Below are positions 19,409 through 23,658 of a stretch of 64,000 nucleotides of DNA, one piece after another. The notes below the pieces were generated by a model, which did no database searches, had not been told where the DNA came from, and worked only from the letters and a program-made list of their open reading frames with translations. Position numbers and translations under genes: made by a program. The stretch lies in sequence record ON529860.1. The stretch is one strand, 5' to 3'. Each line of letters starts with the position of its first letter. Positions within the stretch are counted from its first letter, which is position 1.

Positions 19409-19870
19409 TCAGACCGCCTTGCTCTTGGGCCAGTGCCGCAGCACACCGGCGGCGATCTGCTGCCCGCGCGCGGTGAGCGTGGTCTTGCCCGTCAGCAGCC
19501 CCAGGCGGATGAGATGGTCGAAGATCGGTTGCAGAGACCCGACTTCGGCCGGCATCGGGCGCTCCTGATGCAGACGGATCAGCACCCGGCGATCGTCTTC
19601 GTCAAGGGCGCTGTAGATTTGTTGACGTTCGCTGGCGTCGACTTCGCCCGTCTCGATCAACGTGGAGTCGATCTCCAACGCGCGCGCCGTCAGCATGTCG
19701 GCGATCTCCATCGCGGTATGCATGGCGCTGTTGCGATCCTGCGTGCGGAACGCGGCGACAAGGCGATGGCCCATCTGCGCAGCCGCCCAGGCCGAGATCA
19801 CCTTGGGAGAGCCTACAGGCTCCGCCGCCATCACGGTGTCCAGGGGAACTTCGATGTCGAACTCTTCCAC
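19409..19870 (-). CDS. hypothetical protein, C-terminal wHTH-like
   Basis: GTG start with SD AGGAGG after promoter 19901-19926; HLIRLGLL...TLTARG. Confidence 0.7.
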   Translation of the reverse strand: MEEFDIEVPLDTVMAAEPVGSPKVISAWAAAQMGHRLVAAFRTQDRNSAMHTAMEIADMLTARALEIDSTLIETGEVDASERQQIYSALDEDDRRVLIRLHQERPMPAEVGSLQPIFDHLIRLGLLTGKTTLTARGQQIAAGVLRHWPKSKAV

Positions 19871-19900
19871 GCAGCCTCCTATGTGTCGTCGAACCACCGC

Positions 19901-19926
19901 GTAAAGGAATGAATCCTGACTGTCAA
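19901..19926 (-). promoter_or_regulatory. conserved phage promoter copy 6
   Basis: GTAAAGGAATGAATCCTGACTGTCAA. Confidence 0.8.
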
Positions 19927-20074
19927 CCACCGCCAGTTCTGCTGACGTAGCTTGTCCTTTCACTGGGCGTCCTGTTTTCAGCGCGTGCTGAAACCACCGT
20001 GGGGAGTGAAACCGGCCGTCTTGCGCCATCGGCTGGCCGAGATATGGTGTCGGACGGCCATGGGAGGCAAGCGC

Positions 20075-20374
20075 ATGACTTACATGACGATCGGGCAGGT
20101 GGGCGCGATGGCGCGAGGTCGGGGCATGGTTTTCAGCCGGACCGCCGACACCTATCAATTCCGGCTGCGGTATCGGGACCCGACCGCCTCTGATGCGGAC
20201 GGCCGTTCAGAATGGATCACGGCGGACCTTCAAGAAATCATCGCGGTGCTGCGAACCATGGAGCCGTTCGAACCGCCTCCGGTCGTCACCATCCCCCGCC
20301 AGGCGAACTTCAGCAACAATCGGGCGTGCAGCGACCTGGAGCCGCGCGACAAGCGCTCGTCCAGCGACTACTAG
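20075..20374 (+). CDS. hypothetical protein (99 aa)
   Basis: SD GGGAGG upstream of ATG 20075. Confidence 0.65.
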   Translation: MTYMTIGQVGAMARGRGMVFSRTADTYQFRLRYRDPTASDADGRSEWITADLQEIIAVLRTMEPFEPPPVVTIPRQANFSNNRACSDLEPRDKRSSSDY

Positions 20375-20437
20375 GACAACGCCTAAGGACAGGATGTCCG
20401 CCTAAGTATACATCACGGGTAAAAAGAGTCCGATGGC

Positions 20438-20481
20438 TCACTCGTGGGCTTCGCCCCCTCGTGACCGGCTGCCGCCGGCCC
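20438..20481. repeat. 44-bp dispersed repeat, copy A (copy B at 31735-31778)
   Basis: 41/44 identity between copies; two hairpins. Confidence 0.85.
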
Positions 20482-20546
20482 CCTCCGGACGCCCTGCGCT
20501 CAGACCGACCCGGACCGGCACAGCCGTTTCGGTCGATGTGGATTTT

Positions 20547-20583
20547 TTCATGTTGCTTAAGTCAGCTTCATGTTGTTTAAGTC
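20547..20583 (+). promoter_or_regulatory. tandem 17-bp direct repeat (operator-like) upstream of HTH gene
   Basis: TTCATGTTGCTTAAGTC and TTCATGTTGTTTAAGTC, 20-bp period, AT-rich. Confidence 0.6.
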
Positions 20584-20611
20584 GCGTCATCGCTCAATCA
20601 AGGAGACCGCG

Positions 20612-20935
20612 ATGCGCTACACGCAAGAACAGATCGCCGCCCAGTCGCAACTGGTGACGGACGCCCTGGAGGAACTGACCGAGCATCAAGCCCGGCTCGC
20701 CCACATGCTGAAGCAGAACGCCGCGCCGCTGAAGCCGGGGCCGAAACCGGCCCTGCTGAACATGTACGGCAAGCTGACCGAGTACGGCACGATGGTCATG
20801 TTCGGCATGTTCGCGGCCGGCGATCGCGATAGCGACATTGCAGCCCACTTTGAGATCACGCCCTCGGCCGTGTACGCGCGCCGTCAGCGCTGGGAGAGCG
20901 CCCAGCGCAAGAAGAAGGCGCTTCAGTCGGCCTGA
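20612..20935 (+). CDS. small DNA-binding protein with C-terminal HTH
   Basis: SD AAGGAG; RDSDIAAHFEITPSAVYARRQRW. Confidence 0.75.
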   Translation: MRYTQEQIAAQSQLVTDALEELTEHQARLAHMLKQNAAPLKPGPKPALLNMYGKLTEYGTMVMFGMFAAGDRDSDIAAHFEITPSAVYARRQRWESAQRKKKALQSA

Positions 20936-20943
20936 CGCAGCCT

Positions 20944-20977
20944 TCGTGTTGCCGTATCGGCTGATACGGCAACACGA
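20944..20977. terminator. perfect 15-bp hairpin between convergent genes
   Basis: TCGTGTTGCCGTATC/GGCT/GATACGGCAACACGA. Confidence 0.6.
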
Positions 20978-20990
20978 TCTTTACACGAGG

Positions 20991-21114
20991 CCGGACAGTA
21001 TCCGGACATAAGCGGACATCGTGGCCGTCCATATATGGACGTTTAACCCGCATAACGCCCCTCAAACGTCCATATATGGACGGCAGGCTCGACAATCCGG
21101 ACATTATCCGGACA
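20991..21114. repeat. nested palindrome and ~11-bp direct-repeat array
   Basis: 21-bp perfect inverted repeat (21024-21044/21064-21084), each arm holding palindrome CGTCCATATATGGACG; CGGACA repeats on both flanks. Confidence 0.85.
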
Positions 21115-21645
21115 TCAGGACGGGCGAAGCTGGCTCAGCCGCATCTCGTCGATCCCCTTCGCCAGGGCGTAGTTGGAATAGGCGCGGTCCCCGGTGATCT
21201 CGGCGTCGACGGCTTCGGCGAACCAGGCCGGCATGTTGACGCCGTGGTTCTCGTCCGGCAGTTCGACCTCCAGGATCATCAGGTGGCGCAGGGCGGGGTG
21301 ATCGAACATGTCGAACTCCAGCGTCAGGTCGCCGTGCGGGATCGACCAACGCGTCTTCTCGATACAGGCGCCTTTTGTGTGGTGGATCGCCAGGTTCAGG
21401 TAGGTCATCCCGTCGATCTCGAACTCGATCTCATGGCTGGCGAAGGCAGAACCTTCGACGGGCCGCTTCATCGTCAGGTGATAGCGCGGGTTGAACAGCT
21501 TGCACGAGGTCTGGCGGATGCGCACGATCCATTCGCCCGTCCCCTGGATGTAGGCCTGGGTGATCTTCACCATGCGGGCGGCGTCCAGGACGGCTTCCGG
21601 CGGCAGCGACTTGAGCCGGAACCGGCGTTCGATCTCCACGCTCAT
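21115..21645 (-). CDS. CYTH / triphosphate tunnel metalloenzyme
   Basis: VEIERRF (ExExR), VRIR, LTMK, HEIE, IEKTR, LEVEL motifs. Confidence 0.85.
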   Translation of the reverse strand: MSVEIERRFRLKSLPPEAVLDAARMVKITQAYIQGTGEWIVRIRQTSCKLFNPRYHLTMKRPVEGSAFASHEIEFEIDGMTYLNLAIHHTKGACIEKTRWSIPHGDLTLEFDMFDHPALRHLMILEVELPDENHGVNMPAWFAEAVDAEITGDRAYSNYALAKGIDEMRLSQLRPS

Positions 21646-22358
21646 GCCGGCGCTCCGACGCTGTAAGCGGCTTCCTGCATCCGGCGCAAGGCTTGCGGCC
21701 GGAACGGGACTTCAGCCCGCACAACATCACGCGCGGCGTCCGACGGCTTGAACGTCACATGGGCGCCATGGGGCGACCAAACCGCCCGCACCGGATAGAC
21801 GAGGCCCGCCTGAACGGCGCCGGCGTACTCGTTGTGAATGAACGGCTCGTGGGTCCCGAACTCGACGCCGCGCACCGGCAGCAACAAGCGGGCCACCCGC
21901 CGGTTCACCGCCATCGGCTTAAAGTCCCATCCGCCCCGCTCGACCACTTGCTGGAAGGTGCAGACTTGGTCTGGATCGCCCTCCAGGGTCTTTTCACAGG
22001 CGTAGAGACGCCCCTTCAGGGTCACTTCCCATACGACGTCCTGGCCCTGCGCATCCTGTTCGCACGGCCGCAGGCGGCCGTCGGCGACCGCCGTCACGAC
22101 CAGAGCGCGAAGCGTCGGGTCTTCCCGCATCGGCGTGCGTCGCGCCTCGCCCAGCCAACTATACCGCAGGGTGTCGGCGCCGGTGTCGGCGGTGATGACC
22201 ATGGCGCCGGAGCGGGCGACCGCCGCCCACATGGCGTCGTCCTCCATCTGGGCGCTCTCGGGGTCCATGCCTTGCGGCGCGCGCGCGATGTCGGCGACGG
22301 CCGGCAATCCGACCAGGGCGGCGAGCGCGGTGAAGACGGTGCGTCGGTTCATGTTCAT
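21642..22358 (-). CDS. hypothetical protein with Tat-like signal peptide
   Basis: start moved to MNMNRRTVFTALAALVGL; twin Arg plus hydrophobic core. Confidence 0.65.
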   Translation of the reverse strand: MNMNRRTVFTALAALVGLPAVADIARAPQGMDPESAQMEDDAMWAAVARSGAMVITADTGADTLRYSWLGEARRTPMREDPTLRALVVTAVADGRLRPCEQDAQGQDVVWEVTLKGRLYACEKTLEGDPDQVCTFQQVVERGGWDFKPMAVNRRVARLLLPVRGVEFGTHEPFIHNEYAGAVQAGLVYPVRAVWSPHGAHVTFKPSDAARDVVRAEVPFRPQALRRMQEAAYSVGAPA

Positions 22359-22364
22359 GCCGCT

Positions 22365-22437
22365 TTTCTGCCTTGTCGATTTTTTCGTGTCAACCGCAAC
22401 GGCGCCGGTTGACAGCAATCCCGGCACATGCGAGAAA
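22365..22437. promoter_or_regulatory. back-to-back divergent promoters
   Basis: inverted repeat TGTCAACCG-N9-CGGTTGACA gives TTGACA on both strands, each followed at 17 nt by (C/G)AGAAA. Confidence 0.5.
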
Positions 22438-22443
22438 GAACAC

Positions 22444-22909
22444 CTCGGCGGCGCGGTCCCAGGACAGCGCCGTCGGGCGATCTCGACCGGCACACGGGCT
22501 TGGGAAGATCAGAGGAATAGATGGGGAACCACAGCAGCGCTCCGGCGGGCTGCCCGATCACCGCGCTATCCTTGCGGACCCCTCAGGGGATAGGCTCTGA
22601 CGCCGCAAAGATGTCGAGAGGACGGACCCTGCTGAACGGCGCTGTAACGCCGCCTCGGCAGGGAGCAAGGTTGACCCGACGCGTCTTCAGGCGCGTCCTC
22701 GACTGGACCCCGCCCATTACCAGTATCGTAGGTGGCTAAGCGTTCGCCTCCCCCGTCCGGGACATGTACCGGCCGGACCGAGAGGTATTCGCGAGGCGAG
22801 CACGCCAGGGTTACGTCACCGAAGCCGGTTCACCCGCCCGGCGCGATCGAGGGTCCATGGCCCTCCTTACCAAACCCCCGTCGGCTCGCGTCGGCGGGGG
22901 TCTCTTCTT
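22444..22909 (+). ncRNA. candidate long structured non-coding RNA (RNA1, ~465 nt)
   Basis: no convincing protein ORF; many hairpins; bounded by TTGACA promoter and terminator-like hairpin 22874-22909; family not recognised. Confidence 0.45.
22874..22909 (+). terminator. terminator-like hairpin
   Basis: ACCCCCGTCGGC/TCGC/GTCGGCGGGGGT followed by CTCTTCTT. Confidence 0.55.
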
Positions 22910-22917
22910 GAGGGCCT

Positions 22918-23136
22918 ATGCCGTACCAGATCAGGATCACCACCGCCGACTGCGAAACCCTCTCGGGCCAGACAGGCCTCAAGGGGATGATCTCAGGCTT
23001 GCGCGCCATGAAGGCCTGGGCCGAGGAACACACGCCGGGATGGACCTACATCGCGGGCCTTCAGCGGTTCCAATTCCAGACTGCGGATGACCTCGACCGG
23101 TTCGAAGCGACGTTCAAAAGCGCGCCGGAAGCCTGA
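22918..23136 (+). CDS. hypothetical protein (72 aa)
   Basis: SD GAGGG; protein-like composition. Confidence 0.7.
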   Translation: MPYQIRITTADCETLSGQTGLKGMISGLRAMKAWAEEHTPGWTYIAGLQRFQFQTADDLDRFEATFKSAPEA

Positions 23137-23410
23137 CGAGTCTTCAAGGCTGTATCGGGCGCTAACCCGGAGTTGCCTGGTCTCGTGATGATCAGGGCTG
23201 ATTTTCCTGGTGTTTCCTGCGCCGTATCCCAACAATTTGTTAAGACCTCAGGAGGCGTCTCCAGGCGGACTCGCTGCGCTTTCGGGCGAGGCTTCCCTGC
23301 CGCCGGGGATGGCGGGGCCTCGCGGCCGGAGCGTAATCGGGGGGCGTCATGCGCTCGCACAGGGAAGTGTCCTGCCAAGGACAAGCCTTTGTGGCACACT
23401 TGGGGCGAAA

Positions 23411-23442
23411 CGAAAAGCCCCGCCGGCGAACCGACGGGGCTT
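23411..23442 (-). terminator. intrinsic terminator
   Basis: AAGCCCCGTCGG/TTCG/CCGGCGGGGCTT then TTCGTTT on minus strand. Confidence 0.75.
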
Positions 23443-23658
23443 ATCCACAAGGGAAGGTCCTAAGACCTCGCTCGATGCCTCTTGCCTTACGGCTATCCCG
23501 CATAACGCGTGGACCCCTCACAGGGCGGGTGGACGCTTTTGCCCCGAATGGCGCAACCGATCTATCGTCCGAAACAGGGTGAGACCTCGGCGGCCGCACG
23601 AGGTCTCGGGCGTTCTCAAGCCGGCGTTCCGATCCTCGTACTGACCGGCGATTGAACA
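23411..23658 (-). ncRNA. candidate structured non-coding RNA (RNA2, ~245 nt)
   Basis: promoter TTGACT-N17-CATACT, internal 9-bp stem, ends at UUCG-capped terminator with U-tract; no plausible ORF. Confidence 0.5.

What the first reader, a model, noticed from the sequence alone, without database searches (positions are those of the whole stretch)
20944..21114. Nested palindrome/iteron-like array between convergent genes: origin, recombination or protein-loading site?
Seen within 170 bp: a perfect 15-bp hairpin; CGGACA repeats at about one helical turn (20992, 21003, 21013); a perfect 21-bp inverted repeat with 19-bp spacer whose arms each contain the 16-bp palindrome CGTCCATATATGGACG; then TCCGGACA twice at 11-bp spacing (21096, 21107). 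GGAC is the common core. It lies downstream of both flanking genes, so it is not an ordinary promoter operator. Inference: a multi-site nucleoprotein platform such as a replication origin, centromere-like parS for the ParB-domain protein, resolvase/recombinase site or cruciform-forming signal. A related GGACA-N3-TGTCC occurs near 20392-20404.
Basis: partly seen in the sequence, partly recalled or inferred. Interest (0 to 1): 0.7.

Follow-up and report, generated by a model that had tools for sequence, protein, structure and literature searches.

The report
Orphan operator-and-iteron array in jumbo phage
Between two converging genes of a 357-kb Brevundimonas phage lies a single-copy, conserved set of protein-docking DNA sites whose core matches the operator of bacterial hipBA toxin-antitoxin genes that the phage lacks, so it looks like a borrowed repressor-binding site, not a replication origin or centromere.

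Summary
The described sequence is real and non-random. The window is Brevundimonas phage vB_BpoS-Papperlapapp (record position = window + 124000).

The 170 bp splits into three separable parts:
- **Hairpin (15 bp):** of the same kind as hairpins at other operon ends in this genome, so probably a terminator. It is missing in one relative that keeps the rest.
- **Two 16-bp palindromes:** 24-25 bp apart, 94% and 75% invariant across relatives. The linker between them is only 28% invariant.
- **Flanking units:** five to six ATCCGG(A/C)C units with a 10-11 bp period, all on one helix face.

All motifs occur only here in the 357 kb.

The palindrome pair has the same 14-mer and the same 25-bp spacing as the operator abutting hipB in a metagenomic hipBA locus. 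It resembles eight further alphaproteobacterial hipBA operators. It also fits every sequence rule for NrdR boxes, but with an unusual spacing and in the wrong context. The phage encodes no HipB, HipA or NrdR.

The neighbouring HTH protein has its own conserved upstream repeats. Its homologues elsewhere lack the array.

Nothing supports an origin, a parS site, a recombination site or a cruciform. The function remains inferred: a protein barrier or sink for a host repressor.

The parts
20944..20977 (+). Perfect 15-bp stem with a 4-nt loop, followed by TCTTTACACG. Probably the intrinsic terminator of the HTH gene (stop codon at 20933-20935). Separable from the rest of the array.
   Evidence: Invariant in five phages but absent in relative L260, which keeps boxes and units. 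Same class as the perfect 12-15 bp, 4-nt-loop hairpins at other +|- gene junctions (record 259340, 262140, 286383). It does not meet the scan tool's T-run rule.
20990..21019 (+). Left set of three direct units (CCGGACA at 20991 and 21002, CGGACA at 21013). Period 11 and 10 bp. Family consensus ATCCGG(A/C)C.
   Evidence: 56% of columns are invariant in five relatives, with spacing to box 1 kept. Tandem units of this kind occur only at this locus in the genome.
21026..21041 (.). Box 1: perfect 16-bp palindrome CGTCCATATATGGACG. Operator-type dyad site.
   Evidence: 94% invariant in five relatives. Same 14-mer as the hipBA operator of L306. Meets all six conserved NrdR-box positions (PMC13584703).
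21042..21066 (.). 25-bp linker between the boxes. Length is constrained (24-25 bp in all relatives); sequence is not.
   Evidence: 28% invariant.
21067..21082 (.). Box 2: second copy of the same 16-bp palindrome, 41 bp (about four helical turns) from box 1.
   Evidence: 75% invariant. Positions 2-13 never vary; positions 1 and 14-16 do.
21095..21114 (+). Right set of two direct units (TCCGGACA at 21096 and 21107), same orientation as the left set. It ends at the stop codon of the CYTH gene (21115-21117, minus strand). Bambus and Marchewka carry a third unit through a 10-bp insertion.
20547..20583 (+). Context, not part of the array: two 17-nt direct repeats TTCATGTTG(C/T)TTAAGTC, 20 bp apart, just upstream of the HTH gene. 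Likely this protein's own promoter or operator.
   Evidence: The same tandem motif lies upstream of homologues at 47-72% identity in other contexts (L260, L313, L314, L315).
20612..20935 (+). Context: 107-aa protein with an N-terminal coiled-coil-like part and a C-terminal homeodomain-like HTH. A lone plus-strand cassette (with ORF 20075-20374) inside a minus-strand gene run.
   Evidence: Weak Pfam HTH_23 and HTH_28 hits below cut-off. Atlas neighbours are of HTH_23, HTH_7 and IS630 type. Annotation.
21115..21645 (-). Context: CYTH-domain (triphosphate tunnel metalloenzyme) gene that converges on the array.
   Evidence: Pfam CYTH, E 6e-06. Annotated as inorganic triphosphatase.

Best explanation
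The 170 bp holds two things.

**1. A terminator.** The 15-bp hairpin right after the HTH gene is an ordinary terminator-type hairpin.

**2. A single-copy nucleoprotein platform (20990-21114).** Its core is a pair of identical dyad operators four helical turns apart. This core is of the type that sits on the start of hipB in alphaproteobacterial hipBA toxin-antitoxin loci. Two dimers of an XRE/HipB-type repressor would bind it on one face of the DNA, possibly bridged by a partner protein. Three units on the left and two to three on the right, all ATCCGG(A/C)C in one orientation and in helical phase, would load a second, unidentified protein.

The phage has no hipB or hipA, and no gene starts at the site. 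It is therefore an orphan operator. Most likely it captures a host (or still unrecognised phage) repressor at the 3'-3' junction of two converging transcription units. There it would act as a protein-bound barrier and/or as a sink for that repressor.

**Shown:** the anatomy, uniqueness, conservation pattern, helical phasing and sequence identity with hipBA operators.

**Inferred:** which protein binds and what binding achieves.
For: - **Identity and uniqueness:**
- **Selection on the sites:** box 1 is 94% invariant and box 2 is 75%. The linker is 28% and the spacers 0-17%. The linker length stays at 24-25 bp. A whole 10-bp unit is gained in two relatives. All seven sites fall within about a quarter of a turn.
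- **Match to a hipBA operator:** metagenome contig L306 carries GTCCATATATGGAC twice with a 25-bp linker, abutting the start codon of a 105-aa XRE protein. That protein is 56% identical to Phenylobacterium HipB. It is followed by HipA (tblastn E 7e-143).
- **More hipBA operators of the same design:** eight further alphaproteobacterial hipBA loci carry (A/C)GGCCATATATGGCC pairs with 24-25 bp linkers directly before hipB.
- **Caulobacterales have hipBA:** Caulobacter has three hipBA modules, with identical inverted repeats at set intervals in two of their promoters (PMC7029023).
- **Long-linker pairs avoid RNR genes:** 0 of 59 such pairs lie near RNR or nrdR genes.
- **Hairpin class:**. Separability of the hairpin.
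Against: - Whether B. pondensis has a hipBA module of this family was not tested. L306's HipB is closest to sphingomonad proteins.
- Box positions 14-15 are conserved and symmetric in true hipBA operators. In the phage relatives they vary (GGAC, GGGC, GGAT).
- hipBA loci show no flanking ATCCGG units.
- CCATATATGG palindromes recur in many unrelated settings, including giant-virus tandem repeats and a bacterial dispersed repeat. The motif alone is therefore weakly diagnostic.
- No binding, transcript or phenotype data exist.
- The array is absent from Gurke and Kikimora and from a relative whose HTH and CYTH genes point the same way. It is dispensable in the wider group.
Confidence: 0.42

Rival explanations
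1. The two boxes are an NrdR operator. The host's dATP/ATP-sensing repressor NrdR binds as a tetramer and kinks the DNA at each box. The phage uses it as a nucleotide-level sensor, a roadblock or a decoy.
For: - Both boxes have all six conserved NrdR positions (C4, A6, A8, T9, T11, G13).
- AT content between C4 and G13 is 75%, above the 63% limit.
- The non-conserved 24-25 bp linker lies inside the 24-27 bp window that four NrdRs bind in vitro and that is natural in Streptococcus (PMC13584703, PMC12051234).
- This is the only such pair in the genome.
- The invariant core (positions 2-13) covers the NrdR-critical span, and the outer positions vary.
- Natural NrdR operators next to nrdR and RNR genes can have the CCATATATGG core (L223 and others).
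- Caulobacter encodes nrdR (PMC12186491).
Against: - The site is in no promoter and far from the phage RNR operon, which itself has no boxes.
- Of the sampled CCATATATGG pairs, RNR or nrdR neighbours appear only with 14-17 bp linkers (10 of 41). None appear with 23-27 bp linkers (0 of 59).
- C5 plus G12 lowered affinity 5-10 fold in a synthetic site.
- The identity with a hipBA operator is far more specific.
- Host nrd promoters could not be retrieved for comparison.
Confidence: 0.15
2. Iteron-type replication origin. The ATCCGG(A/C)C units load an initiator, and the ATATAT centres of the palindromes melt.
For: - The site is single-copy, with phased iterons in two sets around an AT-containing centre.
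- CCGGACA arrays with an 11-bp period are common in unrelated viral contigs: 66 of 120 scan hits hold three or more copies.
- The most frequent neighbour (8 loci) is a Prim-Pol + AAA_25 replication protein whose 3' end abuts the array.
Against: - Papperlapapp has no homologue of that replication protein, and no replication gene is nearby.
- Cumulative GC skew follows gene orientation and shows no turn at 145 kb.
- The region is 54% GC and is not among the lowest-GC windows.
- There are no DnaA boxes.
- The array is absent in Gurke and Kikimora and in L313.
- The best-conserved parts are the palindromes, not the iterons.
Confidence: 0.1
3. Centromere-like partition or positioning site (parS/parC-like). 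It would be bent in the middle, with repeats on both arms.
For: - It has two sets of roughly 11-bp direct repeats around a central element, as in R1 parC.
- It lies downstream of a DNA-binding protein gene, as in P1 parS. Both comparisons rest on my own knowledge.
- It is single-copy and helically phased.
Against: - No ParA, ParM or TubZ type gene is adjacent.
It hits only PHROG 5931, of unknown function.
- The neighbouring HTH protein has a different, gene-linked operator.
- The array is absent in sister phages.
Confidence: 0.07
4. It acts at the RNA or DNA-structure level only, as a bidirectional terminator or cruciform made by the 21-bp inverted repeat, with no dedicated binding protein.
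For: - Both strands fold far better than shuffled sequences (z = -9.1 and -8.6).
- The site lies where two transcripts must end.
- In L260 the linker adds its own GGGCG/CGCCC stem.
Against: - In Bambus, Marchewka and L260 the two arms are no longer fully complementary, yet each box keeps its own core.
- Each arm being self-palindromic is unnecessary for a hairpin.
- No U-tract follows the stem on either strand.
- The phased direct repeats are left unexplained.
Confidence: 0.1
5. Site-specific recombination site, for example a crossover palindrome with accessory repeats, used by a phage recombinase or by the Hin-like HTH protein.
For: - The palindromes have an AT centre.
- The neighbour has a resolvase or transposase type HTH.
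- Relatives differ in CYTH gene orientation: L313 is co-directional and the Papperlapapp clade is convergent.
Against: - No catalytic recombinase domain is nearby.
- There is no second copy of the site in the genome.
- No rearranged form appears among six relatives or in the laid contigs.
Confidence: 0.04

Closest known systems
hipBA operators of Alphaproteobacteria (HipB, XRE-family antitoxin/repressor)
   Same: - Two 16-bp perfect or near-perfect palindromes with a CCATATATGG core.
- Outer bases are G(G/T)…(C/A)C.
- The linker is 24-25 bp and not conserved in sequence.
- L306 has the identical 14-mer and the identical 25-bp spacing.
   Different: - In bacteria the pair abuts the hipB start codon and autoregulates hipBA.
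- In the phage no gene starts at the site, and the phage has no hipB or hipA.
- The phage pair is flanked by phased ATCCGG(A/C)C units that hipBA loci lack.
- Its outer positions drift among relatives.
NrdR boxes of ribonucleotide reductase promoters
   Same: - 16-bp partly palindromic boxes in pairs.
- All six conserved positions are present.
- The centre is AT-rich.
- The linker is free in sequence but fixed in helical phase.
   Different: - Usual NrdR linkers are 15-16 bp; here the linker is 24-25 bp.
- NrdR boxes lie in RNR promoters; this site lies at a 3'-3' gene junction with no RNR gene within 140 kb.
Iteron arrays at the 3' end of Prim-Pol/helicase replication genes in other phages (P4- or SaPI-like origin layout, the latter from my own knowledge)
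   Same: - Direct CCGGACA-type units with a 10-11 bp period.
- The units come in sets separated by a spacer (L070, L085, L018, L038).
   Different: - No cognate replication protein is present.
- There are only 5-6 units.
- In relatives the units read CCGGCC as often as CCGGAC.
- The centre is an operator pair, not an AT-rich unwinding stretch.
R1 parC / P1 parS centromeres (own knowledge)
   Same: Two arms of phased short repeats around a central element that is probably bent, all in one unique site.
   Different: No partition ATPase or recognisable centromere-binding protein gene is present. The phage is lytic.

Membership tests
Alphaproteobacterial hipBA (HipB) operator | Palindromic box N-G-(G/T)-CCATATATGG-(C/A)-C-N | tested here: met
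   Both boxes are CGTCCATATATGGACG. Reference boxes come from 9 hipBA loci.
Alphaproteobacterial hipBA (HipB) operator | Two boxes separated by a 24-25 bp linker of free sequence | tested here: met
   The linker is 25 bp in Papperlapapp and Kabachok, and 24 bp in Domovoi, Bambus, Marchewka and L260. The hipBA loci have 24-25 bp.
Alphaproteobacterial hipBA (HipB) operator | The pair lies directly upstream of hipB, followed by hipA | tested here: not met
   Both flanking genes end at the array. tblastn with four HipB and one HipA query finds nothing in the phage genome.
Alphaproteobacterial hipBA (HipB) operator | A cognate HipB is present in the cell (host B. pondensis) | not tested
Phenylobacterium, in the same order, has such a locus (L160).
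NrdR operator | Six conserved positions C4, A6, A8, T9, T11, G13, and at least 63% AT between C4 and G13 | tested here: met
   AT content is 6 of 8.
NrdR operator | Two boxes 15-16 bp apart (24-27 bp is tolerated) | tested here: inconclusive
   The linker is 24-25 bp. This is outside the usual class but inside the range bound in vitro.
NrdR operator | Overlaps the promoter of an RNR operon | tested here: not met
   The site is at a 3'-3' junction. No promoter-like site was found. The phage RNR genes lie at record 291.6-296.4 kb.
Iteron-type replication origin | Adjacent initiator gene, AT-rich unwinding element, and a skew or coverage signature | tested here: not met
   Coverage could not be tested because only assembled contigs were available.
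Partition centromere (parS/parC/tubC) | Linked NTPase and centromere-binding protein genes | tested here: not met
Intrinsic terminator (hairpin 20944-20977 only) | Stable stem-loop directly after a stop codon, followed by a U-rich tail | tested here: inconclusive
   The stem is 15 bp, starts 8 nt after the stop codon and is followed by TCTTTACACG. It resembles other end-of-operon hairpins in this genome.

The most novel reading that the evidence does not exclude
A lytic jumbo phage carries an orphan copy of a host toxin-antitoxin operator. It is reinforced by phased accessory repeats, and the phage genome replicates to high copy number. The site would titrate host HipB or HipB-HipA complexes during infection. 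An alternative target is the nucleotide sensor NrdR. This would be a DNA decoy that tampers with a host growth-arrest or abortive-infection switch, a counter-defence made of DNA and not of protein.
Probability: 0.15. Interest if true: 0.8.

Novelty: new variant of a known kind. Interest (0 to 1): 0.5.

Why it matters
Operators are normally read as switches for the gene next to them. Here an operator of a recognisable bacterial type sits in a phage with no gene to control and no cognate repressor gene. It is kept under stronger constraint than the neighbouring coding sequence.

If a host repressor binds it, phages can use bare DNA sites to sense or drain host regulators. The candidates are a toxin-antitoxin repressor or a dNTP sensor. 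That would add a new class of phage-host interaction, and one that is easy to test in a non-pathogenic system.

If not, the locus still gives a clean, compact model of a two-protein nucleoprotein array in a poorly understood group of jumbo phages.

Tried and rejected
- **GC or AT skew as an origin signal.** Skew only follows gene strand.
- **Read termini and coverage.** Only Logan contigs of viromes were available. The one contig break, at 21067-21072, is an assembler effect of the palindrome.
- **Rfam.** No family matched in 19500-23500.
- **A coding reading.** The 82-aa minus-strand ORF 20856-21104 is broken by indels in relatives.
- **A promoter inside the array.** There is no sigma-70-like site. 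There is also no match to the phage's own strong promoter family.
- **Iteron pairs as weak extra NrdR boxes.** The idea fits Papperlapapp and Bambus at 15-17 bp linkers. It fails in L260, so it was dropped.
- **The adjacent HTH protein as the array binder.** Its homologues keep the upstream tandem motif but not the array.
- **Hairpin arms as a third copy of that upstream motif.** They share TTC(A/G)TGTTGC only and lack the TTAAG part. This was judged to be chance.
- **Fetching host nrd promoters through the phage NrdB.** All near hits were phage loci.
- **A phage-encoded NrdR, HipB, HipA or Prim-Pol initiator.** None was found.
- **The metagenome scan for more relatives.** It returned mainly unrelated tandem repeats.
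- **IMG/VR tandem boxes with 31- and 42-bp periods (L265, L277).** These turned out to be giant-virus repeats and were discarded as evidence.

Full report
**Where this is.** The window is 100% identical to Brevundimonas phage vB_BpoS-Papperlapapp. This is a 356,874-bp jumbo siphovirus of B. pondensis (ON529860.1; record position = window + 124000). The finding covers the whole 179-bp gap between two converging genes. One is a 107-aa helix-turn-helix protein (20612-20935, plus strand). The other is a CYTH-domain triphosphatase (21115-21645, minus strand). The HTH gene and a 99-aa ORF (20075-20374) form a small plus-strand island inside a long run of minus-strand genes.

Only the outlying GGACA-N3-TGTCC is shifted, to 20387-20399.

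I joined the window with the record pieces to scan the whole genome. The 14-mer GTCCATATATGGAC occurs only at these two places. Three of the four ATCCGGACAT copies are here, and the hairpin arm is unique. Tandem CCGG(A/C)C units at 10-11 bp occur only here, apart from two chance pairs. The 21-bp inverted repeat is the longest perfect stem in the genome. The two 16-bp palindromes are the only AT-centred ones.

**Conservation separates three parts.** The array is present in Kabachok, Domovoi, Bambus and Marchewka. It is also present in a more distant metagenomic relative, L260, whose HTH protein is 72% identical.

Across five aligned sequences:

| Segment | Columns invariant |
|---|---|
| Box 1 | 94% |
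| Box 2 | 75% |
| Left units | 56% |
| Right units | 33% |
| Inter-box linker | 28% |
| Short spacers | 0-17% |
| Adjacent CYTH coding end | 61% |

The linker length stays at 24 or 25 bp. Bambus and Marchewka gained exactly one 10-bp unit on the right. The box centres and unit centres all fall within about a quarter of a helical turn. This is the signature of protein-binding sites.

It is not the signature of an RNA or cruciform stem. In Bambus, Marchewka and L260 the two arms are no longer fully complementary, yet each box keeps its own core.

The relatives also correct the proposed 'GGAC core'. The units read ATCCGG(A/C)C, often CCGGCC. The boxes may end in GGGC or GGAT.

**The hairpin is a separate, ordinary element.** It is missing in L260, which keeps the boxes and units. 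Perfect 12-15 bp stems with 4-nt loops sit at other ends of plus-strand operons in this genome (record 259340, 262140, 286383). The stem starts 8 nt after the stop codon and is followed by TCTTTACACG. I read it as the terminator of the HTH gene, although it fails the scan tool's T-run rule.

**What the box pair is.** Two readings came out of the searches.

*NrdR reading.* The boxes meet all published sequence rules for NrdR boxes. They have C4, A6, A8, T9, T11 and G13, and 75% AT between C4 and G13. The linker is not conserved in sequence. Its 24-25 bp length lies in the second window (24-27 bp) that four NrdR proteins bind (PMC13584703, PMC12051234). It is the only such pair in the genome. 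The phage RNR operon has none.

The hits split by linker length:
- With 14-17 bp linkers, 10 of 41 lie beside nrdR or RNR genes.
- With 23-27 bp linkers, 0 of 59 do.
- Among the long-linker hits, eight alphaproteobacterial loci carry (A/C)GGCCATATATGGCC pairs with 24-25 bp linkers directly before a 103-105 aa XRE gene followed by hipA. These include Phenylobacterium, in the same order as the host.

A metagenome scan then found contig L306. It carries GTCCATATATGGAC twice with a 25-bp linker, which is the phage's exact 14-mer and spacing. The pair abuts the start codon of a HipB-like protein that is 56% identical to the Phenylobacterium HipB. HipA follows it (tblastn E 7e-143).

For Caulobacter, three hipBA modules are described, with identical inverted repeats at set intervals in two of their promoters (PMC7029023).

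The phage encodes no detectable HipB, HipA or NrdR.

The hipBA-operator identity is the more specific match, so I rank it first. NrdR remains a live rival. It is favoured by one detail: the invariant positions 2-13 cover the NrdR-critical span, while positions 14-16 drift.

One caution applies to both readings. This palindrome recurs in unrelated settings, including giant-virus tandem repeats and a dispersed bacterial repeat.

**The flanking units.** Their binder is unknown. A scan of IMG/VR for two CCGGACA units 11 bp apart returned 120 loci. Of these, 66 hold three or more copies within 160 bp. Several have the same TTATCCGGACAT unit (L018, L038, L104).

The most common neighbour (8 loci) is a Prim-Pol + AAA_25 replication protein whose 3' end touches the array. 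In those elements the arrays probably mark origins. Papperlapapp has no homologue of that protein. Its relatives use CCGGCC as readily as CCGGAC. The resemblance is therefore a lead, not a membership.

**The neighbouring HTH protein is probably not the array's partner.** Its family is small, with 17 representatives in 1.84 billion proteins. Homologues at 68% and 47% identity sit in other contexts:
- L314 and L315 lie beside IS and DUF4145 genes.
- L313 has the gene order HTH, a 57-aa ORF, then CYTH, all on one strand.

None of them has boxes or units. All keep a tandem motif TTCAYGTWGNTNAAGTC just upstream. In the window this motif lies at 20547-20583. That motif is the likelier operator or promoter of this protein.

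Gurke and Kikimora carry a 40%-identical, syntenic homologue with no array. Their CYTH gene lies elsewhere, also without an array.

**Functions tested and not supported.**
- *Origin:* no skew turn at 145 kb, no very low-GC stretch, no initiator gene. The array is absent in sister phages.
- *Centromere:* no partition genes.
- *Recombination site:* no recombinase nearby and no second copy.
- *Promoter:* none found. This includes the phage's own strong promoter family, which I derived from 23 intergenic regions.
- *Read evidence:* only assembled virome contigs were available, so it was uninformative.

**Most likely mechanism (inferred).** Two dimers of an XRE/HipB-type repressor, or an NrdR tetramer, occupy the boxes four turns apart on one face. 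A second protein coats the phased units on both sides.

The complex sits exactly where two converging transcripts must stop, and it controls no gene start. I take it to be a bound-protein barrier and/or a sink for a host regulator. I put 0.42 on this composite reading, with the HipB-type protein as binder. The rivals are:

| Rival | Probability |
|---|---|
| NrdR as the binder | 0.15 |
| Iteron origin | 0.10 |
| Purely structural or RNA role | 0.10 |
| Centromere | 0.07 |
| Recombination site | 0.04 |

The remainder goes to none of these.

**Novelty.** Operators, iterons and terminators are all known kinds. What is unusual is an orphan operator of a bacterial toxin-antitoxin (or NrdR) type, framed by phased repeats. 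It sits at a 3'-3' junction of a lytic jumbo phage and is held under strong constraint. That makes it a new variant of a known kind. The decoy reading is speculative but directly testable in a harmless phage-host pair.

Noticed in passing
window 20438-20481; also record 97677, 98502, 106783, 155735, 202683, 245904; L260 1-43; L312 2000-2045: A dispersed element of about 45 nt, TCACTCGTG(G/C)GCTTCGC(C/G)CCCTCGTGACYGGCTGCCGCCGGCC, with at least 7 copies, all on the plus strand. It holds two small stem-loops, and the first stem shows a compensatory G/C swap. It often lies just after the stop codon of plus-strand genes, also in Gurke. Possibly a terminator or an RNA-processing element. Virome contigs show it in several contexts.
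   Followed up: partly
L007 (record 51-87 kb), e.g. record 53739, 60266, 64151, 83793: At least 23 near-identical promoters of the form GTTAACCTCTTGTTAAC, about 10 nt, then GCTAGAAC, upstream of small minus-strand genes. From my own knowledge, this is a full CtrA-box (TTAA-N7-TTAAC) over the -35 region plus a Caulobacter sigma-73-like -10 element. It suggests host CtrA-dependent phage transcription.
   Followed up: partly
window 22478-22621 (inside the 560-bp non-coding gap 22359-22917): A 144-bp non-coding stretch about 86% identical to non-coding DNA in the distant phages Kikimora and Gurke, where the surrounding sequence is not alignable. There is no Rfam match. Possibly an unannotated RNA.
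   Followed up: no
window 20387-20412: GGACA-N3-TGTCC followed by CCTAAGTATACATC. It is conserved in five phages with a variable 3-nt spacer, just after the 99-aa ORF. It looks like a separate small operator and is not the same motif as the array units.
   Followed up: partly
It hits only PHROG 5931, of unknown function.
   Followed up: yes
IMG/VR loci L070, L085, L082, L042, L051, L056, L075, L099, L131, L133: CCGGACA iteron arrays with an 11-bp period are widespread in unrelated viral contigs. In eight loci they abut the 3' end of a Prim-Pol + AAA_25 replication gene, which suggests a recurrent origin type. L111 has a TTATCCACA DnaA-box-like sequence beside its array.
   Followed up: partly
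IMG/VR loci L263 (1571-1617), L272 (6059-6105), L280 (732-778): Canonical NrdR-type box pairs (CCCCCATATATGGGG, 15-bp linker) lie 26-31 bp upstream of endolysin (Glyco_hydro_25) genes in L263 and L272, and ahead of scaffold and capsid genes in L280. This hints that some phages put late genes under a host NrdR-like repressor.
   Followed up: no
Genome-contig loci L138, L153, L160, L179, L201, L216, L237, L240; metagenome L306: A consistent operator design for an alphaproteobacterial hipBA family: two (A/C)GGCCATATATGGCC boxes (GTCC…GGAC in L306) 24-25 bp apart, ending at the hipB start codon. I found no description of the sequence in the papers I could read.
   Followed up: partly
L313 134-954; phage hits H45-H53: In a 47%-identical relative the HTH gene and the CYTH gene are neighbours on the same strand. 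In T4-like Aeromonas phages the CYTH homologue sits beside thymidine kinase. Together these suggest a link between CYTH and nucleotide metabolism.
   Followed up: no
L256-L259; record 289868-290647: In this phage group an XRE-type HTH gene is regularly found next to the RNR-glutaredoxin-dUTPase cluster. It is a candidate phage regulator that was not examined as a possible box binder beyond a negative tblastn with HipB.
   Followed up: no
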